Assembly (NCBI RefSeq): GCF_001447785.1
Contig: NW_015174878.1
Coordinates: forward strand, 339,886-393,138
DNA from: Gekko japonicus
Lineage: Eukaryota
Direction: 5' to 3'
DNA: 53,253 bases
The translations under genes and the position numbers were made by a program. This document shows, piece by piece, positions 407 through 23,781 of this stretch (positions are counted from its first letter, which is position 1; every line of letters starts with the position of its first letter). The notes under the pieces were generated by a model that was given only the letters and a program-made list of their open reading frames with translations, was not told the DNA's origin and did no database searches.

Positions 407-413
407 TATAAAA
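407..413 (+). promoter_or_regulatory. TATA box of Gly/Tyr-rich gene copy 1
   Basis: TATAAAAGG ~30 nt upstream of a short exon ending at a consensus donor; the same arrangement occurs in all three paralogues. Confidence 0.85.
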
Positions 414-436
414 GGACGGTCCAACTTCAGTCCATC

Positions 437-476
437 ATCCAACAGCCTCACTTTTGCCTCTTTCTTCAGGAAACCG
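437..476 (+). other. Non-coding exon 1 of copy 1 (TSS approximate)
   Basis: Ends at CCG|GTAAGT donor (GT 477-478), has no ATG; typical SEDC 5' exon. Confidence 0.75.
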
Positions 477-1193
477 GTAAGTTCATTTTTGATCCCGTTG
501 CATTAGCGCATCTTGGAATACTTCTGTGACAATGCAGTTTTTAGTATGTGGTTGGGTCTCTCAAGACAGGTTTCAGTGGTCTTCATTTCTTCCTTTCCTT
601 AAAATGCTTCCTGCTCTCCCTCTATCTTTCTGTGTCTCTGTCTCTCTCTCATTTCATGAGAGAGATGGGTCACAAGCCTTACAATAAATACCTGAATTCT
701 TCCTGCTTGGGAACTTTGTGGCCTTGGGTCACTGAGTTACAGTTCCTAAAATACACATTCACTTCCTTCTCATAACTTTAAACTTTGAGATAATCGAGAT
801 CCTGCACTGAGCAAGGGATTGGACTAGATGGCCTGTATGGCCCCTCCCAACTCTGTGATTCCATGATTCTACTAGCTTTCTGAAAACGATCCAAAAACAG
901 AATTATCCAAGAGGTCTTTTGCAGAGGTACATAGGACGGTATGGTAACAGAACGGTCAGGAAGGGTCGTTGGTCAAGGGACCATGGCTTTCACTACTGTA
1001 TCGCTGCCTGTCACAATAAGGATGCTCCAGACTACATGGTTTCTACAAAACTTTGAGATGTTTGAGATTTCTGTCCGTCTTTAGATTGCTGTAGTCCAGA
1101 CCCTATTGTACGTTTTACTGTAATGTTCAATTTCTCACTATACAAGTACTTGTGGGTATTCAATGAAATTAATGAGCAATAGGTTTAGAAGGA

Positions 1194-1543
1194 GGAGTTG
1201 CGGGGGCTCAAGTGGTTAAGATGCTGAACTGCAGGCTGTGGAAGGTCAGTAGTTAAGCAGTTCGAGACCCGGGTGCTGCTTGATGGAGTGAGCTCTCGTC
1301 TCTAGTTCCAGCTCCTGCCAACCTAGCAGTTCAAAAGCAAGAAATTGCAAGTAGATAAATAGGTACCACTCCAGTGGGAAGGTAACAGCATTCCATGTGC
1401 CTTGGTGTTCAGTCATGCCAGCCACATGACCATGGAAATGTCTTCGGACAGTGCTGGCTCTTTGGCTTTGAAATGGAGATGAGCACCGCAACCCTAGAGT
1501 CGGATTCGACTGGATTTCGAGCAAGGGAACATTTACCTTTACT
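1194..1543 (+). mobile_element. Sauria SINE in intron of copy 1
   Basis: tRNA-like head, CTGCCAACCTAGCAGTTC core, ACCTTT-type tail; TSD TAGGTTTAGAAG (1180-1191 and 1544-1555). Confidence 0.88.
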
Positions 1544-1555
1544 TAGGTTTAGAAG

Positions 1556-1885
1556 AGATAATAGGAAGTACCTCTTCACCCAAAGAAGCGGTGGCAGCTA
1601 CAATCCTAGGCAGTTTCAAAAGGAGATTACAAAAGGATATGGAGCAGAGGTCCTTCAGTGGCTGTTAGCCACAAAGTATAGATGGAACACTGTTTCTGGG
1701 GCATTGATGCTCTGTATTCATAGTGCTTAGGGAGCAGCAGTGGGAGGGCTTCTGGAGTTCTGGCCCCACTGGTGGACCTCCTGATGGCACCATGTGTTTT
1801 TGGCCATTGTGAGTTGGACTGTCCATTGAGTGTTGGACTGGATGGGCCATTGGCCTAATCCAACATGACTTCTCTTACATTCTTA
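1556..1885 (+). mobile_element. CR1 LINE 3' fragment (also at ~12790-13165 in the duplicate)
   Basis: RKYLFTQR-type ORF2 end plus a 3'UTR matching the CR1 at 28950-29304. Confidence 0.75.
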
Positions 1886-2881
1886 CGGATGTCTCATTCT
1901 GTTGATCATACTTGACTCATGCTACATAAACCACCTTGAGTCTTACCAAGAAAGGCAAACTACAAATAACCAAATAATAATAGTAATAATATTAGAGCTA
2001 CCCATCTTAAGGACCACCAAAAGCGAGTACACTGTGTCCCTTCCTTCATTCCCATAGATCCAGATATTATCCAGATATTACACACTGCCGAAGGTGCTGA
2101 AAGTTCAGCCAGTTGATAATAACAGGATTAACTATGAGACATGCTACTAAGCATTATTAAGCTATTTTATAGCTCTAAGTTAACACAGCCATTTTAACAT
2201 AAACCAGGCTGAGCAGGGCCTTCAGCAATGTGTAAGAATGGCCCCTTTGGCTGTTGTCCATTCAGGAAGAATAAGGTGTCAGAGCCACTGGAGCAATCAG
2301 TTCCCAACAGCAGTCATTCAGAAGAATTAACGTTTATTGAGACATTAATGGGTTCCAGACTCTTAATGATTCCTTGTTAGAACTGAGGCCAAGCATGTGA
2401 AACAAGTAACTCTACCTAAATCAAACAGGGTATCAATGGCCCTGGGCCAATCGTACCTAAGCTCAAAGCCCGCCTGAATAACAGCACATAATTTTCAGGG
2501 GAAAGAGGATACCAGGGATAGTTAGGTCTCAAGGGTACATGGCAGAGTCAAGACAGATAACAGCATAGTGAGTAGAAATGAAAGTAAACATTCTTGTTCA
2601 CTCCCCTCCTCCCCAGTCTCCATGACAAACAAGCCCAAGAAGGGGCCAGGATGACATACGGTTAATTTTGGTTGAAGGGCTGAAGAGTGATTTCAATCTG
2701 TCAAATGTTGGTGAATCTACTAGCAGGGCCTTGATGTGTCTGCAGAGATAAAACAAAACAACTAAATTCCTCAATGGTGTAACTTTGTTAGATGTGTGTG
2801 AAGCTTCCCCTTCAGAGGCCAAAGTCTCCTTACATTTCTTCCATGTTGTTTCATTTCAGATCCAACTCCATCTTAATCAAA

Positions 2882-3385
2882 ATGAGCCTCTACAGACACC
2901 AAAGCTACTGGAACCCATGCCGTCGCGGAAGTTTCTCTTCTGGCAGCTGCTACGGAGGTTCCGGCCAACGCATCTCCTATTACCCGTCTTATGGCCGTAG
3001 CTGCTACCCACAGAGCTGTTACGGAGGTTCCGGCCAACGCATCTCCTATTACCCGTCTTATGGCCGTAGTTGCTACCCACAGAGCTGTTATGGAGGTTCC
3101 AGCCAGCGCATCTGCTATTACCCACAGACCTCTTATGGAGGTTATGGCCGTAGCTACTACCCACAGTCCTCCTGGGGTGGTTATGGCTACGGCTATGACC
3201 GGGGTTGTTACCCACAACAATATTACGGGGGCTACGGTTATGGCCGTCGGTATGGATCAGGGTACGGATCCAGGCGTGGCAGCATGTGTTGGGGGTACGG
3301 ATCCAGGCGCGGCAGCATCTGTTACGAGCCCTGCTACCCTATCAAACGAAGGTACAGCTGCAGCAGCATTGACGGACCCTGCTAA
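2882..3385 (+). CDS. Gly/Tyr/Ser/Cys/Arg-rich epidermal differentiation (EDC/SEDC-type) structural protein, copy 1, 167 aa (EDGY-like / keratin-associated-like)
   Basis: Acceptor TTTCATTTCAG|ATCC at 2859/2860 and ATG at 2882. By hand count about 20% Y, 19% G, 18% S, 11% R, 8% C. 23-aa internal repeats and a C-terminal GPC; conserved in two paralogues. Confidence 0.88.
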   Translation: MSLYRHQSYWNPCRRGSFSSGSCYGGSGQRISYYPSYGRSCYPQSCYGGSGQRISYYPSYGRSCYPQSCYGGSSQRICYYPQTSYGGYGRSYYPQSSWGGYGYGYDRGCYPQQYYGGYGYGRRYGSGYGSRRGSMCWGYGSRRGSICYEPCYPIKRRYSCSSIDGPC

Positions 3386-3737
3386 ACACCCGAGTGGACT
3401 TCTGATGAGATGTTAAACGGCAGACCCAATGACTCTCCAGCTGAACTTTTTCTCCCCCCCCCCGAAATGCTGAACACTAAGGAATTCCCATGGTTATTAT
3501 CGTGCATTCAGCAGTTGTCTAAATGACTCCTATGCCCGCCTCTGCGCACACCATGCTGCCTTTAATGACTGTTTCTCTAATGGACAGTCCGTGCATGTCC
3601 ATTAAAGCCCAGTGGGTCCCCCCCACCCCAATTCTGCAGGACACCTTGACAATGGATTCATCCTTCAATATTTCCATGCTGTTCTTTGGTTTGAATCCTG
3701 CAGTTGCTCGTTTTTGCAACCCGCTCTCTGTTCTCAA

Positions 3738-3743
3738 ATTAAA
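3738..3743 (+). terminator. Polyadenylation signal ATTAAA of copy 1
   Basis: ATTAAA followed by T/GT-rich sequence, positionally conserved in copies 2 and 3; an AATAAA at 3948-3953 is an alternative. Confidence 0.65.
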
Positions 3744-4187
3744 AGCTTGCTTTGCATTATGATTGCTTTTCTGGATGTCTCTTGTGTATCTTCTCTCTTT
3801 CTCTCTCTCTCTAGAAGGTCAATCAATATCCTCCGTGGAGGAAAACAGAAGGTGAAGGTTGTGTTTGCAGTCCAGTGGGAGGAAATACTGTGTGAATGGC
3901 AGGTGATATTAGGAGGAGGATGGGTTGAAGTTAGGGAATGATGCTCCAATAAAGAAAACTGTGGTTCCTAGTCGACGGGATCAGTCATTCTGAAGCAGTT
4001 CCCTTGAAAGAAAGTTTGCCATAACTCTTGGCCTTCGCCTGCAATTGATAGCTTGAGGAAAGCTCTGCATACATTTCAAATCATGATTTGCTGGGCTGCA
4101 ATCACGTTTGTTACCCAAGGAGACCCATGCCACAGTATGTATGTTTAAGTATCCCCACAGGTGCAAGTCTTTCACCCTGGTTGCAGG

Positions 4188-4380
4188 CAGTGTTCCCCCT
4201 AAGTTGAGTAAGTGTGAGCTAGCTCACAGTTTTCTAGCCTCCGGCTCACACCTTTTTTTTTTTGGTTCATAGTTCAGGGAATTGATGCTGTAGCCAAGTC
4301 GCTCACCCGCAACTTTAATGCCTGTAGTTCACAAAGTAGAATTTTTGCTCACAAGACTCCATAGCTTGGAGGGAGCATTG
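4188..4380. mobile_element. hAT-type MITE, CAGTGTTCCC family (other copies ~15470-15674, ~24992-25198, ~36559-36766, ~51231-51638, ~51714-51899)
   Basis: Terminal inverted repeats CAGTGTTCCC...GGGAGCATTG; near-perfect 8-bp TSD GTTGCAGG/GTTGCAAG; multiple copies in the window. Confidence 0.75.
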
Positions 4381-4593
4381 GTTGCAAGCCGGTGTTTCAG
4401 CCTGTGTATTCTTAGGTATGGAAAAGAGAAGAAGACAGGGGAGGAGTCTAATGCTTCACCAGGCAGTCCTTTCAATGTCTTTACCAAGAATTCAAGGAAG
4501 AAAAGAAGAGAAAGAAGGTGACTTTAAAGTCAAACCTAAATTGTAAAACATGAGTGGTAGTTAAGAATATAAGAAGATCCCTCCTGGATCAGA

Positions 4594-4869
4594 CCAGTTT
4601 GGTGTAGTGGTTACGTGCACGGACTCTAATATGGGAGAACCAGGTTTGATTCCCCACTCCTCCACCTGCAGCTGCTGGATGACCTTGGGCAAGCCATAGT
4701 TCTATCAGAACTGTCCATGAAAGAGCAATTTCTGTCAGAGCTCTCTCAGACCCACCTACCTCACAGGCTGTTTGTTGTGGGGAGAGGAAGGGAAAGGGAT
4801 TGTAAGCCACTCTGAGACTCCTCTGGGTAGTGAAGGGCGGGGTATAAATCCAAAGTCCTCCTCCTCCTC
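4594..4869 (+). mobile_element. Squam3-type tRNA-derived SINE
   Basis: CCAGTTTGGTGTAGTGGTT (A box), GGTTTGATTCCC (B box), (CCT/CTT)n tail. Confidence 0.85.
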
Positions 4870-4970
4870 ACTCAATTTTTACAGCTTTCAATTACCTGTT
4901 CTTGTTTTTGATTTTGAACTGATCCTATTGACTAGCCTAGGTTTCAAGCTCGTAGTATCTTAGCTCATGA

Positions 4971-5227
4971 TAGGCTTACCAAGTGGCGGCGGGGGATCCG
5001 CATGTCTTCACAGGATCCCTGCCACGGGGACGGCGATACGTGTTGCACCGCCGTCGCCAGGATGTGGCGCAACACGTCGCTCTGGCAACGGGGCTGTTTG
5101 GAGTCCCATTGCCAGAGCGACGCGTAGCGTCACATCCTGGCGACGGCGGGTGCACCACGTATCGCCGTCCCCGTGGCAGGGATCCTGTGAAGACATGCGG
5201 ATCCCCCGCCACCACTTGGTAAGCCTA
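4971..5227. mobile_element. Palindromic hAT-type MITE
   Basis: 257-bp near-perfect hairpin TAGGCTTACCAAGTGG...CCACTTGGTAAGCCTA; exact 8-bp TSD GCTCATGA. Confidence 0.92.
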
Positions 5228-5749
5228 GCTCATGAGGTCCAATGAAGAGCGATGTAAAGCCTTGCTTTGGGCAGAAATCCTTCCTGCCCTAATCCCCTCT
5301 TCACAAAAAGTACAAGCTTAACTCATCGCTTCAGGGCAGGTAATTTTGGGGACCGGCAAAGCTCCCAAAGAAAGTTAATACGGGTTTTAAAAAGCAATCT
5401 GCAAACATTTCCGCGACAAAGATAGAAGACAAGAGAAAGTGTTCGGGTTTCCAGCCTCCAACCGGGGCCTGGACATCTCCCATATAACAAAAGACCTCCA
5501 GACTACAGAGACCAGGTCCCCTGGAGAAAATGGCTGCTTCGGAGGGTGGCATTGTACCCCAGTGAATTCCCTCTTGGGTTTAGACCCTGCCTCTCCCAGG
5601 CTTCCTCACTAGGTCCCCAAGGATTCCCCAACCCAGAGTTGACAACTCTAAGGTTTCCACTGCACTGACTCTAGCAGATCATTACAGTGGAATGGACATG
5701 CCACACAGAAACCCACCAACTTTGCCAGAGGAACCATCGTAGGGGATGG

Positions 5750-9380: not shown

Positions 9381-11281
9381 ATTCCCCCCCTTGTGACCCT
9401 GAAGACGTCAGGCAAATGGGTCACACATACACACTCGCACAGAGTCCACTGGAACACTCATCTCTCCTCTGGAACAGGCGTAGTCATCTGGAGCAGGCGG
9501 CATCTGGAACAGAGGTCTCTGGAACCGGTGCCCTGTCCCAGGTGTCCTAATCTACACTAGCGGGAAAAGGAAGCTTGCCTACAAGAATGCCAATTATGCC
9601 AGAAGTGGCCTGTGCATGTGAGTAGGTACTGTATATCCCATAGCATCAAGCATAGAAATAACTTATCATTGTGTTACTTAAAAAAAAATTATTAAAACCA
9701 ACTATTTCTAAGATAATTATAAGAGAGAACGGTCTAAGTTCTGCTCACTTAGCACACTAAACATCCAATACATCACTAATAAGATAAATACGGTAGCTAA
9801 GCCACCTAAGACATATGTTTTAAGATTCATGTAAAAAGGTTTAAAAGTTACACGCATTGCTTCGTCTTCCCTCCTGCGGCTTGGTCTCTGCTGGTTGACT
9901 GCTTTCGGGGTTGCACGGGAGCAGGAGGGAGGCACGCTATACATTGAGTCTACACGGGGAGGCTTGGGGCTGTTGAGGCTTCGCGGTGTCCTCGGGAATC
10001 TCCGGATGTTTCCGGGCTAAGGCGAAAGCATATGTTTGAGTAACAGCAACTCTTTGGTCTCTTGGTAACAGGCACTGAATAGCCTGCCCCAAGAGGGAGG
10101 AGGGAATTAGCATAAGGCTCCCCCCCTTGCTCTCACGTGTATAAGAGTCAAGGTGGAGATACCCATGCTAGTCCGAGGGAGGGACACAATATGCATATTC
10201 ATTGCCGCCGCGACCATTATTCCATCAACACCTTTCCATCACCGCACTCTACCACCGCGGGTGCGGATATCATCGGGGGTGCGGGTTGTCCCTAGTGGAT
10301 GACAGGGTTGTGGGGATGTATATCACTGTTGTGGTTCAGTTATAACATCTTGAGAACACCACCTTGGTTGTATGATTCAGAGTGAGTATTGGAGCACCGA
10401 TTTTATTTTTATCAATTTTAATTAACTGTAGTACTCTGTATTATTGTATTTTATATTGTTTTATTGTTATAATCTGGCATTTTATGCCCTTGTTAGCCGC
10501 CCTGAGCCTTCAAGGAGGGCGGGATATAAATCCAAAGAATAAATAAATAAGAAAATGTTATTACAGAAAAGAGCTGTGAATCAGTGGTAGATAGGGTTGC
10601 CAAGTCACTTATATTGTGCGGCGGGGGAGTCCTTGTCCCCTGGTCTGATCCAGCAGGGCTCTTCTTATGTTCTTCTCAGGGGTAGACCTCAACCTGTATG
10701 CCCTGTTGTTGGCCCTCCAGAGGAACTGATTGCCCATTGTACAAGACAGGAGGCTGGACTAGATGGCCCACTGGTCTGATCCAGCAGGGCTCTTCTTATG
10801 TTCTTCTCAGGGGTAGACCTCAGCCTCTATGCCCTGTTGTTGGCCTTACAGAGGAACTGGTTGGCCACTGTGCGAGCCAGGATGGACCACTGGTCTGACC
10901 TAGCAAGGTTCTTCTTCTGTTCTTATAGTCAGAATTGTGGGGGGACATGGCCAGTTGAAGGCCAGAGGTAACCAACTGGGAATTTTCAAATCTTCCCAAG
11001 TGATTTGCCGATTCCAGTTCAAAAATTTATGAGTGCCCATCCTGAAGCAAGTAGTAAACTCACGCCCAAGTCTGCTAATGTGAAAGAGAACAGGAAGGTG
11101 TTGGCGGGTCTCGGTTGCCAAGTTGTTTTCGATAGGCTACTAACCGCAGAGGAGGGAGGAAGACCAATTAATGCAATTAAGATGTTGCATCTGTGTGAGT
11201 GAGCCTGGCATGCATGGGTAGATAATTAGGATTTTAAGATGTTGCACAAGGAAATGGGTCATAACAAAACTACTGGGAGCA

Positions 11282-11288
11282 TATAAAA
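11282..11288 (+). promoter_or_regulatory. TATA box of copy 2
   Basis: TATAAAAGG, homologous to 407-413. Confidence 0.85.
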
Positions 11289-11311
11289 GGACGGTCCAAC
11301 TTCAGTCCATC

Positions 11312-11351
11312 ATCCAACAACCTCACTTGTGCCTCTTTCTTCAGGAACCCG
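11312..11351 (+). other. Non-coding exon 1 of copy 2 (TSS approximate)
   Basis: Ends at CCG|GTAAGT (GT 11352-11353). Confidence 0.75.
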
Positions 11352-14164
11352 GTAAGTTCCCTTTTGATCCAGTTGCATTAGCACATCTTGAAATACTTCT
11401 GTGACGATGACGTTTTTAGTATGTGGTTGCGTCTTGCAAGACAGGCTTCGGTGGTCTTCATTTCTTTCTTTCCTTAAAACACTTCCTGCTCTCCCCCTGT
11501 CTTTCTGTGTCTGTCTCTGCCACTCTCTTTCTCTCTCTGTCTGTCTCTCATTTCATGAGAATACTGGCCGCAAGCCTTAAAATAAATACCTGAATTCTTC
11601 CTGCTTTGGAACTTTGTGGCCTTGGGTCACAGAGCTATGGCCCCTAAAGTCCACATCCGCTTCCTTCTCCTAACTTTAACCTTTGAAATAATCATGGCAA
11701 TTAGAATCTTGAATGTTGAACTCCAAACGGGCAATGTGGATTTGAGAAGTAAATTGAAAGGGGTTATTAATAGCATCTGTGTACATATCTTCTGGGTTAG
11801 GCGTTAAGACTCTAAGCCTCAACACTCTCTACAGGAAATATGTCCTCTTGAACTCTGCCAGGTGTCTTTGTCTAACATAGGAGCTCATGGGAGGGCAAAA
11901 AAACACAGCTTCTCAGAACTGTAGTTAGGCTCAAGAATTGGTACAAATCTGATCAGCGTGGCATAAGAAGTGAGTCCATCAACTTAGGATAAAGACTGAT
12001 GTGAAGTTCAGGGGGCGCTCAGAACACCTGGATGATAAACTAGTAGACTCCAGGTTAAATAGAGGCTATATTTTGTATGTTGGGGAACGTTGGCCATTTT
12101 CCTTTGTGGCCCTCACCCCATGGAATGGCCTCCCTGATGAGGTTAGGAAAGGTCCTACTCTACTGTGCTCTTTTGAAGTATTGGAAGGGCTGTCACTGAG
12201 AGGAGGGCAGGGAGCTGTCCCTGTTGGCAGCAGAGGAGAGGACACGCAATAATGGGTCTAAATTAAAGGTGAGAAGGTACCTGGCTGGATGGTAGGAAAT
12301 GCTTTTTGACAGTCAGAGTCTTGCAATGGTGGAATCAGCTACCAAAGGAAGTAGTGAGCTCCCCTTCACTGGCTGTCTTGAAGCAGCAGCTGGACAAACC
12401 CTTGTCAGGGATGCTCTGGGCTGATCCTGCGCTGAGCAGGGGATTGGACTAGATGGCCTGTGTGGCCCCTCCCAACTCTGCGATTCCATGATTATACTGG
12501 CTTTCTGCAAACTATGCAAAAGCAGAATAATCCAAGAGGTCTTTTGCAGAGGTACGTAGGACGGTATGGTAACAGAACAGTCAGTTAGTGTCATCGGTCA
12601 AGGGACCGTGGCTTTCGCTACTATATTGCTGCCTATCACAGTAAGGATGTTCCAGACTAGGTGGTTTCTACAAAACGTTCAGATGTTTGAGATTTCTGTT
12701 TTGTCTTCAGATTTCTGTAGTCAAGACCCTATTGTACTGTTCACTGCAATGTTCATTTCTCACTATACAAGCACTCGTGGGAATTCAATAAAATTAATGA
12801 GCATTAGGTTTAGAACAGAAAATAGAAAGTACCTCTTCACCCAAAGAGGAATTAATGTGGAATTCACTGCCACAGGAAGTGGTGGCAGCTACAAGCCTAG
12901 GCAGCTTCAAGAGAGGATTAGATAAAGATATGGAGCAGAGGTCCATCAGTGGCTGCTAGCCACAAGGTATAGGTGGAACACTATGTCTGGGGAAGTGATG
13001 CCCTGTATTCTTGGTGCCTGAGGAGCAACAGTGGGAGGGCTACTGGAGTTCTAGACCCACTGGTGGACCTCCTGATAACACCTGGGTTTTGGCCACTGTG
13101 TGACACAGAGTGTTGGTCTGGATGGGCCACTGGCCTGATCCAACATGGCTTCTTTTACATTCATACAGATGTCCCATCCCATTGATCATACTTGACTCAT
13201 ACTACATAAACCACCTTGAGTCTTACCAAGAAAGGCAAACTACAAATAACCAAATAATAATAGTAATAATATTAGAGCTACCCATCTTAAGGACCACCAA
13301 AAGCGAGTACACTGTGTCCCTTCCTTCATTCCCATAGATCCAGATATTATCCAGATATTACACACTGCCGAAGGTGCTGAAAGTTCAGCCAGTTGATAAT
13401 AACAGGATTAACTATGAGACATGCTACTAAGCATTATTAAGCTATTTTATAGCTCTAAGTTAACACAGCCATTTTAACATAAACCAGGCTGAGCAGGGCC
13501 TTCAGCAATGTGTAAGAATGGCCCCTTTGGCTGTTGTCCATTCAGGAAGAATAAGGTGTCAGAGCCACTGGAGCAATCAGTTCCCAACAGCAGTCATTCA
13601 GAAAAAGTTTATTGAGACATTAATGGGTCCCAGACTCTTAACGATTCCTTGTTAGAACTGAGGCCAAGCGTGTGAAACACGTAACTATACCTAAATCAAA
13701 CAGGGTATCAATGGCCCTGGGCCAATCGTACCTAAGCTCAAAGCCCGCCTGAATAACAGCACATAATTTTCAGGGGAAAGAGGATACCAGGGATAGTTAG
13801 GTCTCAAGGGTACATGGCCGAGTCAAGACAGATAACAGCATAGAGAGTAGAAACGAAAGTAAACATTCTTGTTCACTCCCCTCCTCCCCAGTCTCCATGA
13901 CAAACAAGCCCAAGAAGGGGCCAGGATGACATACGGTTAATTTTGGTTGAAGGGCTGAAGAGTGATTTCAATCTGTCAAATGTTGGTGAATCTACTAGCA
14001 GGGCCTTGATGAAGGGAAGGGTCTGCAGATATGAAACAAAACAACTAGATTCTTCGATGGTGTAACTTGGTTAGATGTGTGTGAAGCTTCCCCTTCAGAG
14101 GCCAAAATCTCCTTACATTTCTTCCATGTTGTTTCATTTCAGATCCAACTCCATCTTAATCAAA

Positions 14165-14668
14165 ATGAGCCTCTACAGACACCAAAGCTACTGGAACCCA
14201 TGCCGTCGTGGAAGTTTCTCTTCTGGCAGCTGCTATGGAGGTTCCGGCCAACGCATCTCTTATTACCCATCTTATGGCCGTAGCTGCTACCCACAGAGCT
14301 GTTATGGAGGTTCCAGCCAACGCATCTCCTATTACCCGTCTTATGGCCGTAGTTGCTACCCACAGAGCTGTTATGGAGGTTCCAGCCAGCGCATCTGCTA
14401 TTACCCACAGACCTCTTATGGCGGTTATGGCCGTAGCTACTACCCACAGTCCTCCTGGGGTGGTTATGGCTACGGCTATGGCCGGGGTTGTTACCCACAA
14501 CAATATTACGGGGGCTACGGTTACGGCCGTCGGTATGGATCAGGGTACGGATCCAGGCGTGGCAGCATGTGTTGGGGGTACGGATCCAGGCGCGGCAGCA
14601 TCTGTTACGAGCCCTGCTACCCTATCAAACGAAGGTACAGCTGCAGCAGCATTGACGGACCCTGCTAA
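14165..14668 (+). CDS. Gly/Tyr-rich EDC-type protein, copy 2, 167 aa
   Basis: Acceptor AG 14141-14142 and ATG 14165; two amino-acid differences from copy 1 (GGSGQ>GGSSQ, YDRG>YGRG). Confidence 0.88.
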   Translation: MSLYRHQSYWNPCRRGSFSSGSCYGGSGQRISYYPSYGRSCYPQSCYGGSSQRISYYPSYGRSCYPQSCYGGSSQRICYYPQTSYGGYGRSYYPQSSWGGYGYGYGRGCYPQQYYGGYGYGRRYGSGYGSRRGSMCWGYGSRRGSICYEPCYPIKRRYSCSSIDGPC

Positions 14669-15021
14669 ACACCCGAGTGGACTTCTGATGAGATGTTAAA
14701 CGACAGACCCAATGACTCTCCAGCTGAACTTTTTCTCCCCCCCCCCGAAATGCTGAACACAAAGGAATTCCCATGGTTATTATCGTGCATTCAGCAGTTG
14801 TCTAAATGACTCCTATGCCCGCCTCTGCGCACACCATGCTGCCTTTAATGACTGTTTCTCTAATGGACAGTCCGTGCATGTCCATGAAAGCCCAGTGGGT
14901 CCCCCCCACCCCAATTCTGCAGGACACCTTGACAATGGATTCACCCTTCAATATTTCCATGCTGTTCTTTGGTTTGAATCCTGCAGTTGCTCATTTTTTG
15001 TAATCCAATCTCTGTTCTCAA

Positions 15022-15027
15022 ATTAAA
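15022..15027 (+). terminator. Polyadenylation signal ATTAAA of copy 2
   Basis: Homologous to 3738-3743. Confidence 0.65.
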
Positions 15028-15876
15028 AGCTTGCTTTGCATTAAGATTGCTTTTCTGGATGTCTCTGGTGTATCTTCTCTCTCTCTAGAAGGGCAATGAA
15101 TGTCTTCCATGGAGGAAAACAGAAGGAGAAGGCAACTGGTTGTGTTTGCAGTCCAGTGAGAGGAAATACTGTGTGAATGGCAGGTGATATTAGGAGGAGG
15201 ATGGGTTGAAGTTAGGGAATGATGCTCCAATAAAGAAAACTGTGGTTCCTAGTCGACGGGATCAGTCATTCTGAAGCAGTTCCCTTGAAAGAAAGTTTGC
15301 CATGACTCTTAGCCTTTTCCTGCAATTGATAGCTTGAGGAAAGTTTTCCATACATTTCAAATCATGATTTGCTGGGCTGCAATCACATCTGTTACCCAAA
15401 AGAGACCCATGCCACAGTATGTATATTTAAGCATCCCCACAGGTGCACGTCTTCAACCCTGATTGCAGGCGGTGTTCCCTCTAAGCTGAGTAAGTGCGAG
15501 CCAGCTCACAGTTTTTAGCCTCCTGCTCACACATTTTTGCCTTAGCTCAGAAAGGATGGCTCCAGAGCAAACTAATTTATGCAGCAGCCAAGTCGCTCAA
15601 TAACAACTTTAATGCCAGTAGCTCACAAAGCAGAATTTTTGCTCACAAGACTCCACATCTTGGAGGGAGCATTGGATGCAAGCTGGTGTTTTAGCCTGTG
15701 TATTCATAGATGTGAAAAAGCTTCATAGACATGAAAAAGAGAAGAAGACAGGGAAGGAGTCTAATGCTTCACCAGGCAGTCCTTTCAATGTCTTTACCAA
15801 GAATTCTAGGAAGAAAAGAAGAGAAAGAAGGTGACTGTTAAGCCAAATCTAAACTGTAAAACACGAGTGGTAGTTG

Positions 15877-17020
15877 AGAACATAAGAGAAGCCCTGCTGG
15901 GTCAGACCAGTGAGGGTCCATCCAGTCCATCATCCCGTCTCACACAGTGGCCTCAACCAGTTCCTCTGGAGGGCCAAGAACAGGGCAGAGAGGCCAAGGC
16001 CTTCCCCTGAGGAGAACCTCAGAAGAGCCCTGCTGGGTCAGAGCAGTGAGGGTCCCTCTAGTCCATCATCCCGTCTCACACAGTGGCCTCAACCAGTTCC
16101 TCTGGAGGGCCAGCAACAGGGCAGAGGGGCCGAGGCCTTCCCCTCATAAGAACATCAGAAGAGCCCTGCTGGATCAGAACAGTGAGGGTCCATCTAGTCC
16201 AGCATCCTGTCTCACACAGGGGCCTCAACCAGTTCCTCTGGAGGGCCAGCAACAGGGCAGAGAGGCCGAGGCCTTCCCCTCATAAGAACATCAGAAGAGC
16301 ACAAAGGGTCGAGCACTCCGGGAAGCCACTAGCAAGGGAGGGGGGAAAGGGAAATATGGGTATTGGATAAGTGAAAGCCAATGTTAAATGTGATATTATA
16401 TCCAAAAAATAAAAGTTTTGTACCAAAAAAAAAAAAAGAACATCAGAAGAGCCCTGCTGGATCAGAACAGTGAGGGTCCATCTAGTCCAGCATCCCATCT
16501 CACACAGTGGTCAACCAGTTCCTCTGGAGGGCCAACAAACAGGGCAGAGAGGCTGAGGTCTTCCCCTGATGTTGCGTCCTTTCTCTGATATTCAGAGGTT
16601 TAATGCCTGTTAATGTGGAGGTCCCCCTCCATCACCATGGCTAGTAGCCATCAATAGACCTATTATCCATTAATCTATCTATCCCCCTTTTAAAGCTCAT
16701 TATTCCAGTGGCCATCACTACACCCTCTGGCAACAAATCCCACATTTTGACCACTCTCTGTGTAAAGTACTATTTCCTTTTCTCCATCCTGGTCCTACTG
16801 CCCATCAGCTTCACTGGATGCCCTCGAGTTCTAGTATTTGGGGAGAGGGAGATTCCCCCCCCCCTTTTGTCCACTCTCTCCACCCCATGCATGATTTTTG
16901 CAAACCTCTATCATGCCCCTGTGTGTTGTCTCTTTTTCTAAACTGAAAAGTCCCAGACTCTTCAGTCTTTCCTCAGAGGAAAGATGCTCCAACCCCCTCA
17001 TCATCTTGGTTGCCCTGCGC
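15877..17020 (-). mobile_element. CR1 3' fragment with ~136-bp tandemly amplified 3' end
   Basis: Units start near 15877, 16013, 16149 and 16285/16437, followed by ORF2-end sequence (KYYF.. on the opposite strand). Confidence 0.75.
16301..16435 (+). mobile_element. Short 5'-truncated poly(A) retroposed insertion (L1-type)
   Basis: AATAAA plus poly(A); TSD AAGAACATCAGAAGAGC on both sides. Confidence 0.65.
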
Positions 17021-17044
17021 TGTAGAATGATAGCAATTCATTCA

Positions 17045-18254: not shown

Positions 18255-18324
18255 TGGGCCTCCTCCCGGTATTCTCCAACATCAGTCGCTGCAGTGTGAA
18301 CAGGAAAAGTCGGAACAGTGTGTT

Positions 18325-18930
18325 GTGTCATCTGCAAATTTAGCCACTTCACTGCTTACTCTGAACTCCATATCATTAATAGACAAATTTAAAAGCATCA
18401 GGCCGAGTAGTGATCCCTGCGGTACCCCACTGCTTAGCACCCTCCACTGAGAAAATTTCCCATTTATACTCAATCTCTGTTTCCTATTAATTAGCCAGTT
18501 TTTTATCCACAAAAGGACTTGTCCTTTTATCCCGTGACTATTGAGCTTACTTAGGAGCCTTTGATGAGGAACTTTTTCAAAAGCTTTCTGGAAGTCAAGG
18601 TAAACAACATCTATTGGGTCCCCCTTGTCCACGAGTTTGTTCAGTCCCTCAAAGAACACTAACAGGTTAGTGAGACAAGATCTTCCCTGACAGAACCCAC
18701 ACACAAAACAAAGGTTTTGTTCATCAGTGTGCCTACAATTTTTTCCCTAATAACAGTTTCCACCAACTTACCCGGTATCTACGTCAGACTGACTGGCCTG
18801 TAATTTCCCTGATCTCCTCTGGAACCCTTTTTAAAGATGTGAGTGATATTAGTTGAGTGAATGGCTGTAATTACTGCCTGTAATTTTCTGGATCTCCTCT
18901 GGAACCCTTTTTTTAAAGATGGGAGTGACT
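18325..18930 (-). mobile_element. CR1 reverse transcriptase fragment
   Basis: ORF 18282-18704: GRSCLTNLL, YLDFQKAF, SGVPQGS, KFADDT. Confidence 0.88.
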
Positions 18931-19262: not shown

Positions 19263-19375
19263 TCCTTCTATTAGGCCAACTCTACTGCTTTGGCAGCCTC
19301 ACATTTGGTTCTAGCTTACCCTCCCACCATTCCTTGGCTCTCTGCTTGGTGCATTGTAAGTTTTTGGATCTCCTT

Positions 19376-19704
19376 AGGTAAAGGTAAAGGCTTCCCTTGC
19401 TCAAAAGCCAGTCAAAATGCAACTCAAGGGATGCGGTGCTCATCTCCGTTTCCAAACCGAAGAGCCAGCGCTGTCCAGAGACATTTCCGTGGTCATGTGA
19501 CTGGCATGACTAGATGCCAAGGCACACGGAATGCTGTTACCTTCCCACCAAAGCGGTAACTATTTACTCACTTGCAATTTCTTGCTTTTGAACTGCTAGG
19601 TTGGCAGGAGCTGGGACCAGAGACAGGAGCTCACTCCGTCACGTGGTACTCGGGTCTCGAACTGCTGAACTACCAACCTTCCAGTCTGCAGTTCAGCATC
19701 TTAA
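19376..19704 (-). mobile_element. Sauria SINE
   Basis: Reverse complement of the 1194-1543 family, with (ACCTTT)n tail. Confidence 0.85.
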
Positions 19705-20010
19705 CTCCTGCTGGCACCTGGTATTTTTGGCCACTATGTGACAGAGTGTTGGACTGGATGGGCCTTTGGCCTGATCCAACATTGGCTTCTCTGATGTTCT
19801 TAGATGGTCTGATCCAACAGGGAGCTATTGAGTCATATTTCTCTCCCATCTTCCCATGAGCCTCCCATGATATCTTTTAAAGCTGACATACCATTTCATG
19901 TTCTCTTGCTCCACAGACTATCCATCCACTCATTACAATTTCTTCAAGAGGAGGATATGGACGGCAGTCTTCATTAACACACACGACTACATAGAGAGAA
20001 GCTGTGATTT

Positions 20011-20297
20011 CCAGTTTGGTGCAGTGGTTAAGTGAGCGGACTCTAATCTGGGAGAAGCGGGTTTGATTCCCCACTCCTCCACTTGCACCTGGCTGGATGA
20101 CCTTGGGCAAGCCATAGTTCTGATAAGAGCTGTTCTTGAAGAAGAGCAGTTTCTGTCAAGAGCTCTCTCAGCCCCACCTACCTCACAGGGTGTCTGTTGT
20201 GGGGAGGGGAAGGGAAAGGAGTCTGTAAGCCGCTCTGAAACTCCTTTGGGTAGTGAAGAGTGGTGTATAAATCCAATCTCTTCTTCTCTTCTTCTTT
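20011..20297 (+). mobile_element. Squam3-type SINE
   Basis: Family head, body and CTT tail. Confidence 0.85.
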
Positions 20298-20403
20298 TCC
20301 CTCTCAGCCCCCCCCCGCCCCCCAATATCTCCCTAACAAGAATTGGGCATCAGGAATGGATAACCAGAGAAACCAGAAAGACATTTGTGATGCAAAGCAA
20401 GTT

Positions 20404-20409
20404 TTTAAT
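20404..20409 (-). terminator. Polyadenylation signal ATTAAA of copy 3
   Basis: CTCAGATTAAAAACTTGCTTTGCAT is homologous to the copy 1/2 signal context. Confidence 0.65.
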
Positions 20410-20760
20410 CTGAGAGCAGAAAGTGGATTGCGGCACAGAGGGACAGCAGGCTTCAGTCAGAATGACAAAACCCAGATGGAACGTGGAAAGATGTTTCAAT
20501 TGTCCAGGTGTCCCGCAGGAGATTAAAAGGATATAACAGGAACCGGTGGGCTTTCGTAGACACTCAGGTAGTGTCCATTAGAAAGTTATTCATCAGAGGC
20601 AGAGTGCAAGGTGAGCAAAGGCAGGCCTAGGGGTGATTTATAGAAGTGCTGAACACACGATGATAACCATTGGACTTCTTCGGGGGGGGGGGGAGTTCAT
20701 CCGGAGAGTCGTCGAGTCCATGTTTCCTTTTAGCATCTCACTGGAATGTCCCTCCAGATC

Positions 20761-21192
20761 TTAGCAGGGTCCGTCAATGCTGCTGCAGCTGTACCTTCGT
20801 TTGAGAGGGTAGCAGCCGCCAGAACTGTAGCCATAGGGCTCGTAACAGATGCTGCCACGCCTGGATCCATACCCCCAAGACATGCTGCCACGCCTGGATC
20901 CGTACCCCCATCCATACCTACGACCGTAGAGGCCACCGTAACCGTAACCTCCATAATTTTGTTGTGGGTAATAACCTCGGCCATACCCATAACCACCACA
21001 GTAGAGGGGTGGCATGTAGCTACGGCCATAACCACCCCAGTAGGTCTGCGGGTAGTAGCTACGGCCATAACCGCTGTAAGAGGTCTGCGGGTAGTAGCAG
21101 ATGCGTTGGCCGGAACCTCCATAGTAGCTGCCAGAAGAGAAGCTTCCACGACGGCATGGGTCCCAGTAGCTTTGGTGTCTGTAGAGGCTCAT
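20761..21192 (-). CDS. Gly/Tyr-rich EDC-type protein, copy 3, 143 aa
   Basis: Acceptor TTTCAG|ATCC (exon starts at 21214) and ATG at 21192; MSLYRHQSYWDPCRRGS...KRRYSCSSIDGPC; frame-preserving indels relative to copies 1/2. Confidence 0.88.
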   Translation of the reverse strand: MSLYRHQSYWDPCRRGSFSSGSYYGGSGQRICYYPQTSYSGYGRSYYPQTYWGGYGRSYMPPLYCGGYGYGRGYYPQQNYGGYGYGGLYGRRYGWGYGSRRGSMSWGYGSRRGSICYEPYGYSSGGCYPLKRRYSCSSIDGPC

Positions 21193-21681
21193 TTTGATTA
21201 AGATGGAGTCGGATCTGAAATGAAACAACATGGAAGAAATGGTGAAGTGCCTTTGGGCACTGAGCTGGAAACTTTGCACACCTCTAATGACGTTGCCCCA
21301 TGGAACAATTCACGGTTACTCTGCTCATCTCCACTGGCATTTCCCTTCACCTGCTAGGAGATCCTCCATCATTCCATCGATTGAAATAACTCCTCAGCCC
21401 TTCAGCCTAAATGAACCTTGTTTCCATTGCACACGCAACAGCCGGAGGGGCCACTCTTACACGTCGCTGACGGCCCTGCTCTGCCTGCTTTGCTTCAAAT
21501 TAGTTGAGCTAATTTATTTATTTATTTTATAAAACAGTTTAAGAATGTTTCATGACAAGTCCACGGTGGATCCTTTCGTTATAAAGTGGCTAGAAGTTCA
21601 ACAGGATTGACAGTATTTGATCATCTGGACAAGCAGCCACAGGGAAAATGGAAAAGAAGCTGTGTGTAGCATGCCTATTTC

Positions 21682-22085
21682 CAGGGCTATTTTTGGGCAG
21701 GAACGCACAGGAATGGAGTTCCGGCTGGCTCTCGAGTTGGCCACGCCCAGCAAAAACTCATTAGCATAATAGGCCACACTCAACAGCAGGAACTCATTAG
21801 GATTGGCTACATTAGGGGTGTGTGGCCTAACATGCAAAGGAGTTCCTGCTACAAAAAAAAAAAAAAAAACCCTGGGTTTTGACAACAAACAAGGTAAACA
21901 GAATAAGAAGCAAAAGGTGGGTGTGGCTGGATGACCACACTTCTGGTAATGTGGGGGTGTGGCCTAATATGCTAATGAACTTATCTGTTAGGGTGTGGCC
22001 TAATATGCTAATGTGTTTCTGCTGTTGGGTGTGACCTATTATGCTAATAAGTTCCTGCTGGGCTTTTTCTACAAAAAAAGCCCTG
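21682..22085. mobile_element. hAT-type MITE in intron of copy 3 (related copy ~36025-36340)
   Basis: CAGGGCT...AGCCCTG ends; exact 8-bp TSD CCTATTTC. Confidence 0.8.
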
Positions 22086-22224
22086 CCTATTTCCAATACA
22101 CCCCAACATTTATAATGTAGATTTTGTTTAACCAAGAATCTACTACATTATTGTCCAGTTGTTGTGAGTGACTCCAGAACTACACACAGTGACTCAGGAA
22201 ACCTCATCCCCTGCCACATATTTT

Positions 22225-22668
22225 ATTTTTTTATTTTTATTTTTATTTATTTTATTCGGCTTTTATCCCGCCCTCCCCTGCATAGCAGGCTCAGGGCGGG
22301 TTACATCAATTTTGATAAAATAAAGTCTATACATTCATACAATTAAAACACTAATAAAATACCACCATGGCCTTCATCCAGAGCCGTTGTCATGGACATC
22401 AAAACGTCACAGATGCCAACTCTAATATGCAGATCTGACCCGTTGAGTGGAGGCCCAGTAAAGAGAGAGGAACACCCCTCGCTCTAATTAAAAGCCTGGC
22501 GGAAGAGCTCCGTATTACAGGCCCTGCGGAACTGTAAAAGGTCCCGCAGGGCCCTGATTCTCATATGGGAGCTCATTCCACTCCAGGTGAGGTGGACGTC
22601 CCTGGGGCCAGGGACCATGAGAAGATGTTGATTGGCAGATCGTAAAGCCCTTCAGGTCTCGCAGATAT
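22225..22668 (-). mobile_element. L2-type LINE 3' fragment (related copy ~30290-30750)
   Basis: Stem-loop CCCGCCCT...AGGGCGGG with (TAAA)n tail; interrupts the hammerhead repeat array. Confidence 0.6.
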
Positions 22669-23010
22669 GCTAGACTTTAAGGTGCTCCTGGACTCTTGCT
22701 CTTTTCTACTGCTACAAACAGACTAGCATGGCCATCTTGATCTACCTGAAGAAGAGAGCAGTGACTCACAAAAGCTCATCCCCCACAACAGATTTTTGTT
22801 AATCTTCAAGGTGCTCCTGGACTCTCGTTCTTTTATGCTGCTATAGACCGACTGACATGGCTACCCATCTTGATCTGTCTGAAGAAGTGAGCAGTAAATC
22901 CTGAAAGCTCATCCCCTGCCATAAATTTTGTTGGTCTTGAAGGTGCTCCTGGATTCTTGCTGTTTTCCACTGCTACAGACAGACTAACAAGACTCCCCAT
23001 CTCGATCTAC
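22669..23010 (+). repeat. ~130-bp tandem repeat of Penelope-like terminal repeat with degenerate type I hammerhead ribozyme motifs
   Basis: AAGGTGCTCCTGGA recurs at 22679, 22808 and 22940; CTGAAGA-stem II-(G/A)AAAGCTCA motifs at 22746 and 22879; partial unit at ~22186. Confidence 0.7.
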
Positions 23011-23175
23011 ACATACTGCTGATCTTCATTATGCCAGCTTTCATCCTCTCAATTGTCACATAGGTCAGAAGATTAAAGTTAGGAAAGGATGGGACTGTTA
23101 ACTTTGATACTGTAGCTTAACGGTAGAAGTTCGCCCAATTCCCAAGCAGGAAAAAAAATTCGGAACTTATTTTAA

Positions 23176-23530
23176 GGAGCTGCAGTGGCTCAAGTGGTTA
23201 AGATGCTGAACTGCAGGCTGTGGAAGGTCAGTAGTTCAGCAGTTCGAGACCCGAGTTACCGCATGACGGATTGAGCTACCGTCTCTGGCCCCAGCTCCTG
23301 CCAACCTAGCAGTTCGAAAGCAAGAAATTGCAGGTAGATAAATAGCTACCACTGCGGTGGTTAGGTAACAGCATTCCGTGTGCCTTGGTGTTTAGTCATG
23401 CCGGCCACATGACCACAGAAACGTCTTTGGACAGCGCTGGCTCTTTGGCTTTGAAACGGAGATGAGCACCGCAAGCCTAGAGTCGGATTCGACTGGCTTT
23501 CGAGCAAGGGAACCTTTACCTTTACCTTTA
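23176..23530 (+). mobile_element. Sauria SINE in intron of copy 3
   Basis: Full head to (ACCTTT)3 tail. Confidence 0.88.
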
Positions 23531-23712
23531 GCCAACTTCTCATGACATTAGAGAGAGAAAGAGAGAGAGAGAGAAAGAGAGAGAAGAAAACATTGAAAAG
23601 AAGGAATAAACCAAGGCCACAGGGACCTGTTTTGCAAGATCCAACACATTTTTTAAAAAAAAGTCAAAAAAGGCATTTGAAGATACACTAAGTCGGTCAA
23701 ATTGGAACTTAC

Positions 23713-23751
23713 TTGACTTTCTGAAGACTGAGCAGTTCAGGTGAAGCTGTT
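23713..23751 (-). other. Non-coding exon 1 of copy 3 (TSS approximate)
   Basis: Ends at CAA|GTAAGT donor (intron starts at 23712). Confidence 0.72.
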
Positions 23752-23774
23752 CGAGAGATGAAGATGGACTGTCC

Positions 23775-23781
23775 TTTTATA
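23775..23781 (-). promoter_or_regulatory. TATA box of copy 3
   Basis: TATAAAAGGACAGTCC, homologous to TATAAAAGGACGGTCC of copies 1/2. Confidence 0.85.

What the first reader, a model, noticed from the sequence alone, without database searches (positions are those of the whole stretch)
407..23781. Expanding three-gene family of Gly/Tyr-rich skin-type proteins with EDC architecture
Seen: three intact paralogues, each with TATA, a ~40-nt non-coding exon, an intron, a single coding exon and ATTAAA. Termini are conserved (MSLYRHQSYW...KRRYSCSSIDGPC) and all indels preserve frame. Established: this two-exon layout defines SEDC genes of the amniote epidermal differentiation complex. Inference: a lineage-specific (probably gecko) expansion of a cornification protein that automatic annotation would easily miss or mislabel, and a candidate component of scales, claws or adhesive setae.
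Basis: partly seen in the sequence, partly recalled or inferred. Interest (0 to 1): 0.78.

Follow-up and report, generated by a model that had tools for sequence, protein, structure and literature searches.

The report
Gecko glycine-tyrosine-rich skin-type gene trio
Three working copies of a small gene for a floppy, glycine- and tyrosine-rich protein sit together in a gecko genome; they look like ordinary reptile skin-hardening genes of a family that snakes also have, so this is a solid but unsurprising find.

Summary
The window carries three intact paralogues: A (+, CDS 2882-3385), B (+, CDS 14165-14668) and C (-, CDS 21192-20761). Each has a TATA box 69-70 nt before a GTAAGT donor, a 2.4-2.8 kb intron, one coding exon and a conserved ATTAAA about 352 nt after the stop.

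Contigs of two runs from two studies carry the 476/2860 splice. Letters specific to A and to B, and the 3'UTR of C, are all seen in run contigs.

The proteins are 143-167 aa, about 20% Gly, 20% Tyr, 15-19% Ser and 10.5% Arg. They match no Pfam family, are predicted disordered, and are under purifying selection.

The gene layout meets the published search rule for "simple EDC" cornification genes (PMC4245816).

The family is not gecko-specific. Collinear homologues exist in three snakes (hhalign probability 98.9%). Sphaerodactylus expanded its copies independently. Databases label these proteins KRTAP-like or prisilkin-like.

They most likely correspond to the Gly/Tyr-type EDC genes (EDGY, EDGGY or EDYM2) already catalogued for lepidosaurs, Japanese gecko included, in supplements I could not open.

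EDC location and tissue of expression could not be tested. Verdict: real, expressed, a new member of a known kind, of modest interest.

The parts
407..413 (+). Gene A TATA box (TATAAAA), 70 nt before the donor
435..476 (+). Gene A non-coding exon 1. The start is inferred from the TATA box. The end at 476 is shown by the spliced joint; contigs reach back to 447.
477..2859 (+). Gene A intron (2383 nt, GT..AG). It carries interspersed repeats at about 1190-1900 that attract very many reads from elsewhere.
2860..3760 (+). Gene A exon 2: 22-nt leader, CDS and 3'UTR. The end is approximate: contigs stop at 3639, 3724 and 3756, and depth is 0 from 3784.
2882..3385 (+). Gene A CDS, 167 aa plus stop. 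It contains a 69-nt tandem unit x2.6 (2945-3123) and a 33-nt unit x1.9 (3260-3323).
3601..3606 (+). ATTAAA present only in gene A (B has ATGAAA and C has ACGAAA here)
3738..3743 (+). Gene A ATTAAA, conserved in all three copies 351-353 nt after the stop; the likely main poly(A) signal
11282..11288 (+). Gene B TATA box, 70 nt before the donor
11310..11351 (+). Gene B non-coding exon 1 (start inferred)
11352..14142 (+). Gene B intron (2791 nt)
14165..14668 (+). Gene B CDS, 167 aa. It differs from A at 9 nt: 7 synonymous and 2 replacements (G51S, D106G). B-specific letters are seen in run contigs at the A positions 3198, 3241, 3478 and 3603.
15022..15027 (+). Gene B conserved ATTAAA
23775..23781 (-). 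Gene C TATA box, 69 nt before the donor
23713..23753 (-). Gene C non-coding exon 1 (start inferred; donor CAA|GTAAGT)
21215..23712 (-). Gene C intron (2498 nt)
20761..21192 (-). Gene C CDS, 143 aa; identical to database protein P0002. Contigs that run from the shared C-terminal coding part into the 3'UTR of C were seen in X1 and X2.
20404..20409 (-). Gene C conserved ATTAAA
1..4598 (+). Segmental duplication unit 1; its partner is 10876-15911. It runs off the window start, so further copies upstream cannot be excluded.
10876..15911 (+). Segmental duplication unit 2

Best explanation
These are three expressed paralogues of a squamate-wide family of small, intrinsically disordered proteins rich in Gly, Tyr, Ser and Arg and containing Cys. 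Their genes have the 'simple EDC' (SEDC) layout. The family most likely matches the Gly/Tyr-type non-beta EDC genes that the Eckhart group names EDGY, EDGGY or EDYM2.

Shown:
- Each gene is transcribed downstream of a TATA box.
- A short non-coding exon is spliced to one exon that holds the whole reading frame.
- The products have no signal-peptide-like hydrophobic start, no known domain and no predicted fold.
- They are under purifying selection.
- The middle of the protein changes length through in-frame tandem duplication, while both ends stay fixed.

Inferred:
- The protein is made in the cytoplasm of terminally differentiating keratinocytes.
- It packs as matrix between keratin or corneous beta-protein filaments through Tyr/Arg (pi-pi, cation-pi) contacts.
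- It is locked in place by disulfide bonds from its conserved cysteines during cornification. It would then be a functional analogue of mammalian high-glycine-tyrosine keratin-associated proteins.
- The A/B pair is a young tandem duplicate that has gained a 69-nt repeat.
For: Architecture:
- TATA to donor is 69-70 nt. The donor is G|GTAAG in A and B, the acceptor is identical in all three, and the ATG is 22 nt into exon 2.
- Strasser et al. 2014 (passages read) define SEDC genes as a non-coding exon 1 plus one coding exon. They searched for exon 1 as a G-GTAAG donor 60-90 nt after a TATA box.

Expression:
- A GT..AG joint 476/2860 is present in contigs of X1 and X2.
- Exon 2 depth is 293-621 (X1) and 702-5566 (X2), against 0 and about 9 in unique intron bins.
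- A-type, B-type and C-type letters are all present.
- 20 of the 24 listed runs, from 7 studies, hold part of exon 2.

Protein:
- There are 0 Pfam families at E<=1.
- AlphaFold mean pLDDT is 33 with no secondary structure.
- The nearest named ESM Atlas clusters are KRTAP families, at 0.86; this is a lead only.

Selection: dN/dS is 0.075 for A versus B (7 synonymous, 2 replacement changes) and 0.13-0.23 against C.

Family:
- Snake homologues are collinear from the N-terminal MS.Y..QS..DPCR..SFSSGS to the C-terminal SICY(E/D)P...PC.
- The profile-profile comparison gives probability 98.9%, E 1.2e-17.

Literature (passages read):
- EDGY, EDGGY and EDETM are lepidosaur-specific non-beta genes inside the corneous beta-protein cluster (PMC7393497).
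- Pogona EDGY1 has a 390-nt CDS and was detected in claws but not in skin (PMC11704414, Table 1).
- Gecko homologues lie on 178-286 Mb sequences, and the G. japonicus EDC is reported on chromosome 1 (PMC10776941). This is weak, indirect support.
Against: - No S100A, loricrin, corneous beta-protein or other SEDC-like gene lies in the 53-kb window. Of 94 ATG-ORFs of 60 aa or more, only the three genes have a biased skin-type composition. A published beta core-box motif gave only noise, best E 0.37. EDC location is therefore not shown.
- No published EDGY, EDGGY or EDYM2 sequence could be compared, because the supplements are closed.
- The proteins lack the Gln/Lys-rich ends typical of many transglutaminase-substrate SEDC proteins; A has one Lys.
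- The tissue of the expressing runs is unknown. X1, X2 and X4 are only guessed to be RNA by the tool. No table of the joined form in DNA runs was given, so a processed DNA copy is argued against only by the depth contrast and small contig totals.
- The exhaustive HMMER search of 1.84 billion representatives found only the gecko cluster plus two hits I judge spurious. No iguanian, lacertid or tuatara homologue was found.
Confidence: 0.7

Rival explanations
1. The genes belong to a keratin-associated-protein-like matrix family that lies outside the EDC, for example an independent squamate cluster. The function in hard-cornified cells would be similar, but the family would not be SEDC.
For: - RefSeq names for relatives are KRTAP19-2-like, KRTAP6-2-like, KRTAP21-1-like and KRTAP16-7.
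- The nearest named ESM Atlas clusters carry PF11759 KRTAP at 0.86.
- No EDC marker lies in the window.
Against: - There is no Pfam KRTAP match at E<=1.
- The gene has a spliced non-coding first exon with the SEDC TATA-to-donor spacing. By my recollection, mammalian KRTAP genes are intronless.
- A review states that high-glycine-tyrosine KRTAPs are not present in reptiles or birds (PMC11816140, passage).
Confidence: 0.2
2. The product is a low-complexity protein with a function outside the epidermis. Examples would be a secreted shell or matrix protein, as the 'prisilkin-39-like' label suggests, or a Tyr/Arg/Gly-rich condensate protein in another tissue.
For: - One Sphaerodactylus relative carries the label prisilkin-39-like.
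- The tissue of the expressing runs is unknown.
Against: - The N-terminus MSLYRHQSYWNPCRRGSFSS is polar and charged, with no hydrophobic signal-peptide core. This is read directly from the sequence; no predictor was run.
- The label is an automatic match by composition.
- One RNA run, about 3% read (16.75 million records), has no read on the exons, so expression is not ubiquitous.
- The gene layout is SEDC-like.
Confidence: 0.07
3. One or more copies are non-functional duplicates: transcribed pseudogenes, or an assembly duplication of a single gene.
For: - A and B are 98.2% identical in the CDS.
- The A and B proteins are absent from the 15-billion-protein collection.
Against: - All three frames are intact.
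- A differs from B by 7 synonymous and 2 replacement changes, dN/dS 0.075.
- Flanks and introns differ by 3-12% with indels, so A and B are not a collapsed or duplicated assembly artefact.
- Both A-type and B-type letters occur in run contigs.
Confidence: 0.03

Closest known systems
EDGY / EDGGY (and EDYM2) genes of the lepidosaur epidermal differentiation complex (Holthaus et al. 2017, 2020; PMC5366951, PMC7393497; Pogona EDGY1 in PMC11704414 Table 1)
   Same: - SEDC two-exon layout.
- No beta-sheet core.
- Gly/Tyr-rich, matching my reading of the gene names (their meaning is not given in the text I read), with several GGY motifs.
- Several copies per species.
- Present in snakes and geckos.
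- Size is close to Pogona EDGY1: a 390-nt CDS against 123-167 aa here.
   Different: - Identity is inferred only. The published sequences and the gecko gene table are in supplements I could not open.
- Position between the two corneous beta-protein clusters could not be checked.
- I cannot say which of the three names applies.
Mammalian high-glycine-tyrosine keratin-associated proteins (KRTAP6/19/20/21; Pfam PF11759)
   Same: - Small, disordered, Gly/Tyr-rich and cysteine-containing, with no signal peptide.
- Automatic annotation and language-model features place the gecko proteins next to them.
- The likely role is the same: matrix between filaments.
   Different: - No Pfam match.
- The gene has an intron in its leader.
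- Ser (15-19%) and Arg (10.5%) contents are also notable here; I made no comparison with KRTAP composition.
- The family has its own conserved ends.
- A review says this KRTAP class is absent from reptiles.
- The resemblance is most likely convergent.
EDYM1 (claw/beak SEDC protein with tyrosine motifs)
   Same: A tyrosine-rich SEDC protein of hard appendages.
   Different: - EDYM1 is reported as single-copy in lepidosaurs and lost in snakes (PMC11704414, PMC5366951 passages). This family has snake members and several copies per gecko.
- The Pogona EDYM1 CDS is 585 nt, which is longer.
Corneous beta-proteins (beta-keratins)
   Same: - SEDC-type gene layout.
- Gly/Tyr- and Arg/Cys-rich tails are described for lepidosaur corneous beta-proteins.
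   Different: - No beta core: no Pfam family and no predicted strand.
- The published S-core box motif finds nothing in the window.

Membership tests
SEDC (simple EDC) genes | A 5' non-coding exon plus a second exon holding the entire coding region | tested here: met
   The joint 476/2860 (GT..AG) is in contigs of X1 and X2. The ATG is 22 nt into exon 2 and the whole ORF lies in exon 2. The definition is from PMC4245816. B and C are inferred from identical splice signals.
SEDC (simple EDC) genes | [quoted passage not shown] 2014) | tested here: met
   The distances are 70, 70 and 69 nt. The donor is CCG|GTAAGT in A and B, and CAA|GTAAGT in C, where the base before the GT is A rather than G.
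SEDC (simple EDC) genes | Location in the EDC, between S100A genes | not testable with these tools
Earlier notes of the scan hold no EDC window.
SEDC (simple EDC) genes | Expression restricted to tissues that contain keratinocytes | tested here: inconclusive
   Exon depth is high in X1, X2 and X4, and one RNA run (X22) has no exon reads. Run tissues are coded.
SEDC (simple EDC) genes | Low-complexity, repeat-containing protein without a folded domain | tested here: met
   Tandem units of 69, 33 and 39 nt are. No Pfam family matches. Mean pLDDT is 33.
EDGY/EDGGY genes | Sequence similarity to published EDGY/EDGGY proteins | not tested
   The sequences are only in supplements, which are closed. 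Searches for the gene names found 2 papers. Searches for the terminal peptides found 0 papers.
EDGY/EDGGY genes | Position inside the corneous beta-protein gene cluster | not testable with these tools
   No beta-protein gene lies within the 53 kb. No access to the rest of the 578-kb contig.
EDGY/EDGGY genes | Conserved across lepidosaurs (tuatara, lizards, snakes, geckos) | tested here: inconclusive
   Homologues were found in 4 gecko species and 3 snake species. None was found in iguanians, lacertids or tuatara. Such genes are often missing from predicted protein sets, so absence means little.
High-glycine-tyrosine KRTAP (PF11759) | Match to the Pfam KRTAP model | tested here: not met
   0 families at E<=1 for A and C, and 0 at E<=0.01 for the snake proteins P0009 and P0012.
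High-glycine-tyrosine KRTAP (PF11759) | Intronless gene (recalled from general knowledge) | tested here: not met
   A spliced leader intron of 2383 nt.
Corneous beta-proteins | Central beta-sheet core box | tested here: not met
   No Pfam match. No strand was predicted. The S-core motif from the PMC4673495 legend gives only noise.
Prisilkin-39 (secreted mollusc shell matrix protein) | Secretion signal | tested here: not met
   The polar N-terminus MSLYRHQSYWNPCRRGSFSS was read directly. No signal-peptide predictor was available.

The most novel reading that the evidence does not exclude
The Gekko lineage has recently duplicated and lengthened one member of an old squamate Gly/Tyr-rich SEDC family. 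The A/B type gained a 69-nt repeat and lost two short segments. This may have produced a new matrix protein for a gecko-specific hard structure such as adhesive setae or their supporting lamellae. The family as a whole would be the reptile counterpart, evolved independently inside the EDC, of the mammalian high-glycine-tyrosine hair matrix proteins that reviews say reptiles lack.
Probability: 0.2. Interest if true: 0.55.

Novelty: new member of a known kind. Interest (0 to 1): 0.3.

Why it matters
The trio is a clean, expression-backed example of how reptile cornification genes evolve. The ends of the protein stay fixed, the middle changes by in-frame repeat gain and loss, and copies arise by local duplication independently in different gecko lineages.

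It shows that public annotation hides a squamate-wide family under misleading KRTAP and prisilkin names. Two of the three copies here are absent from the 15-billion-protein collection searched.

If tissue data place the young A/B copies in toe pads or claws, they would be concrete candidates for the non-beta matrix of those structures. They would also be a case of convergence with mammalian hair matrix proteins.

The family was probably already catalogued by the EDC literature, so the gain is refinement rather than discovery.

Tried and rejected
Synteny could not be established.
- Earlier notes of the scan held nothing on EDC, S100, loricrin, keratin or skin.
- The window has no other skin-type ORF and no beta core-box.

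The exhaustive HMMER search with the gecko profile gave 3 hits at E<=0.001 in 1.84 billion representatives. One was the gecko cluster. I reject the other two, P0005 and P0006, as unrelated repeat proteins after reading them.

Pairwise BLASTP of gecko C against snake P0009 is weak (E 0.007). Homology rests on the profile results and on the collinear ends.

Searching papers for the terminal peptides found nothing.

Rejected after comparison with passages read:
- EDYM1 identity: it is reported as single-copy and lost in snakes.
- Corneous beta-protein identity.
- True KRTAP membership.
- A secreted prisilkin-like role, from the N-terminus.

I did not try to name the species of the window or the tissues of the coded runs. 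Two G. japonicus studies that might match the coded studies were read (PMC4673495; PMC11140998), but nothing ties them to the runs.

Full report
**What is there**

The window holds three paralogous genes:
- A, plus strand, CDS 2882-3385, 167 aa.
- B, plus strand, CDS 14165-14668, 167 aa.
- C, minus strand, CDS 21192-20761, 143 aa.

- TATAAAA starts at 407, 11282 and 23781 (minus strand).
- Donors follow 476, 11351 and 23713.
- An identical acceptor, TTTCATTTCAG, precedes 2860, 14143 and 21214.
- The ATG is 22 nt into exon 2.
- Introns are 2383, 2791 and 2498 nt.

The ATTAAA at 3601 is private to A. All three copies share an ATTAAA 351-353 nt after the stop, at 3738, 15022 and 20409.

A and B lie in a tandem segmental duplication, 1-4598 versus 10876-15911. 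Identity by region:

| Region | Identity |
|---|---|
| Upstream | 96.8% |
| Intron | 87.7-94.8% |
| CDS | 98.2% |
| 3'UTR | 98.8% |
| Downstream | 91.0% |

C is inverted, tail to tail with B, and is 76-81% identical to A/B over exon 2. Unit 1 of the duplication runs off the window start, so more copies upstream cannot be excluded.

**Expression**

Exon 2 of A was used to find runs. Of the 24 runs listed, 20 hold part of it and 13 hold half or more of its sampled words; they come from 7 studies. None is on record as RNA, and all labels are coded.

I laid X1, X2, X4 (contigs) and X22 (raw RNA reads) on 300-4300.
- A GT..AG joint 476/2860 is present in one contig each of X1 (depth 270) and X2 (depth 1046).
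- X4 has no depth over exon 1.
- X22 has no read on any exon among the 16.75 million records read, about 3% of the run.
- Exon 2 depth is 293-621 in X1, 702-5566 in X2 and 20-132 in X4. Unique intron bins are 0 in X1, about 9 in X2 and 0-2 in X4.
- Contigs end at 3639, 3724 and 3756. Nothing lies beyond 3783, which fits the conserved ATTAAA at 3738.

All three copies are seen.
- B-specific letters (3198 G, 3241 C, 3478 A, 3603 G; compare) occur in X1, X2 or X4.
- A-type letters occur at 3241 and 3603 in X2 and at 3603 in X1.
- Contigs that leave the shared C-terminal coding part into the 3'UTR of C occur in X1 and X2.

Caveats:
- The tool only guesses that X1, X2 and X4 are RNA.
- The table of the joined form in other runs was not given. 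The RNA nature therefore rests on the depth contrast and on contig totals of 28-133 million letters.
- The start of exon 1 is inferred; contigs reach back only to 447.

**The proteins**

Composition:

| Residue | A | C |
|---|---|---|
| Tyr | 19.8% | 21.0% |
| Gly | 19.2% | 22.4% |
| Ser | 18.0% | 14.7% |
| Arg | 10.8% | 10.5% |
| Cys | 7.8% | 4.9% |

- The N-terminus is polar, with no signal-peptide-like hydrophobic stretch. This is read directly from the sequence.
- No Pfam family matches at E<=1.
- AlphaFold with the 6-row alignment gives mean pLDDT 33 and no secondary structure.
- The middle is built of tandem units: 69 nt x2.6 and 33 nt x1.9 in A, and 39 nt x2.1-2.2 in C.
- Length differences among relatives are whole-unit gains and losses between fixed ends.
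- A versus B has 7 synonymous and 2 replacement differences: dS 0.068, dN/dS 0.075. A and B versus C give dN/dS 0.23 and 0.13. The counts are small, but the direction is clear: the copies are kept by selection.

**Relatives**

The single-sequence search found 4 proteins at E<=0.001 among 1162 candidates:
- Gekko kuhli, a hypothetical protein.
- Gene C itself, on a 578,184-nt contig.
- Sphaerodactylus townsendi, 'prisilkin-39-like'.
- Heteronotia binoei, 'keratin-associated protein 19-2-like'.

S. townsendi has three distinct copies.

A tree of 8 rows, with the annotated N-terminal extensions of 3 rows cut off, gives these groupings:
- The three Sphaerodactylus copies form one group (99/97).
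- A pairs with B (97/96).
- C pairs with G. kuhli (88/89; 91% identity).
- The order among A/B, C/kuhli and Heteronotia is unresolved.

Duplications are therefore lineage-specific at least in Sphaerodactylus, and the A/B split is young.

The exhaustive HMMER search found nothing credible outside geckos. Profile searches through the word index added four proteins:
- Thamnophis elegans, 'keratin-associated protein 21-1-like', 135 aa, E 1.6e-6.
- Ophiophagus hannah, 'Keratin-associated protein 16-7, partial'.
- Crotalus horridus, a hypothetical protein.
- One unnamed Logan protein.

These align collinearly with the gecko proteins, end to end. The gecko and snake profiles match with probability 98.9%, E 1.2e-17. 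The family therefore dates back at least to the common ancestor of geckos and snakes.

The exact A and B proteins are not in the 15-billion-protein collection, whereas C is. The ESM Atlas does hold A letter for letter. Its best cluster (0.91; 61 chordate members, no Pfam family) may be the family's own, and the next ones are KRTAP families at 0.86.

**What it is**

Strasser et al. 2014 define SEDC genes as a non-coding exon plus one coding exon. They located exon 1 as a G-GTAAG donor 60-90 nt after a TATA box (PMC4245816, passages). All three genes meet this rule, except that C has A instead of G before the GT.

Holthaus et al. 2020 state that EDGY, EDGGY and EDETM are lepidosaur-specific genes without a beta-sheet motif that interrupt the corneous beta-protein cluster. 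The same study annotated the Japanese gecko EDC in supplements (PMC7393497, passages).

Table 1 of PMC11704414 lists Pogona EDGY1 with a 390-nt CDS, detected in claws and not in skin.

Composition, size, copy number, gene layout and the gecko-plus-snake distribution all fit such a gene.
- EDYM1 is excluded: it is reported as single-copy and lost in snakes.
- EDYM2 cannot be excluded.

I could not compare sequences or check the position, so this identification is an inference.

**Mechanism**

Shown: TATA-linked transcription, leader splicing, a cytosolic-type disordered product, purifying selection, and repeat-driven length change.

Inferred from established knowledge of SEDC and keratin-associated proteins:
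- Synthesis late in keratinocyte differentiation.
- Packing between filaments through Tyr and Arg contacts.
- Fixation by disulfides from the conserved cysteines. C13, C147, C151, C160 and C167 of A are invariant among the six gecko sequences aligned.

The proteins lack the Gln/Lys-rich ends of classic transglutaminase substrates. This makes them work more like hair matrix proteins than like loricrin.

**What remains open**

- EDC location.
- The tissue of expression.
- Which published name applies.
- Whether the A/B type has a gecko-specific role.

The window downstream of C (24-53 kb) is repeats, LINE fragments and three N gaps. It gives no synteny information.

Noticed in passing
window 348-354, 11223-11229 and 23852-23846 (minus strand): A homeodomain-type core, TAATTAG, lies 59, 59 and 71 nt upstream of the three TATA boxes. 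Only 7 copies of this heptamer occur on both strands of the whole window. It sits in a block conserved between A/B and the diverged copy C. It might be a site for a skin-appendage homeobox factor; no test was made.
   Followed up: partly
window 2860-2881 and the homologous leaders of B and C: The 22-nt leader before the ATG is identical in A and B and nearly identical in C. Its in-frame reading ('..NKM') recurs in the over-extended database models of Heteronotia, G. kuhli, Sphaerodactylus and cobra. The leader sequence itself therefore seems conserved across squamates, and several public models start too early.
   Followed up: partly
window 3386 onward, in contigs of run X1: The contig of X1 that runs into a C-type 3'UTR differs from the window's gene C by one letter within the 30 shown. 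X1 also shows a CCC insertion after 3453 and C>A at 3458, and X4 shows C>T at 3535; none of these is B-type. They may be alleles or a further unassembled paralogue.
   Followed up: no
window 26563-28869 (+) and 18282-18704 (-): There is a 768-aa open frame with endonuclease and reverse-transcriptase domains (PF14529, PF03372, PF00078), which is a LINE. A shorter reverse-transcriptase fragment is 88% identical to part of it.
   Followed up: partly
window about 1190-1900, 4186-4300, 19375-19705 and 23175-23525: Interspersed repeats inside the introns and flanks are extremely abundant in all four runs laid, with summed depths up to 300,000. They are unrelated to expression of the genes.
   Followed up: no
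window 39701-40472: A roughly 600-nt purine-rich tandem array gives long artificial open frames in several reading frames (poly-Glu/Ala, poly-Lys/Gln, poly-Leu).
   Followed up: no
window 41562-41764, 43509-43927 and 46151-46280: Three runs of N of 203, 419 and 130 letters; left untouched.
   Followed up: no
run X13, organism B: A run labelled as a second organism holds 45% of the sampled words of A's exon 2. A close relative therefore seems to carry and express an A/B-type copy.
   Followed up: no
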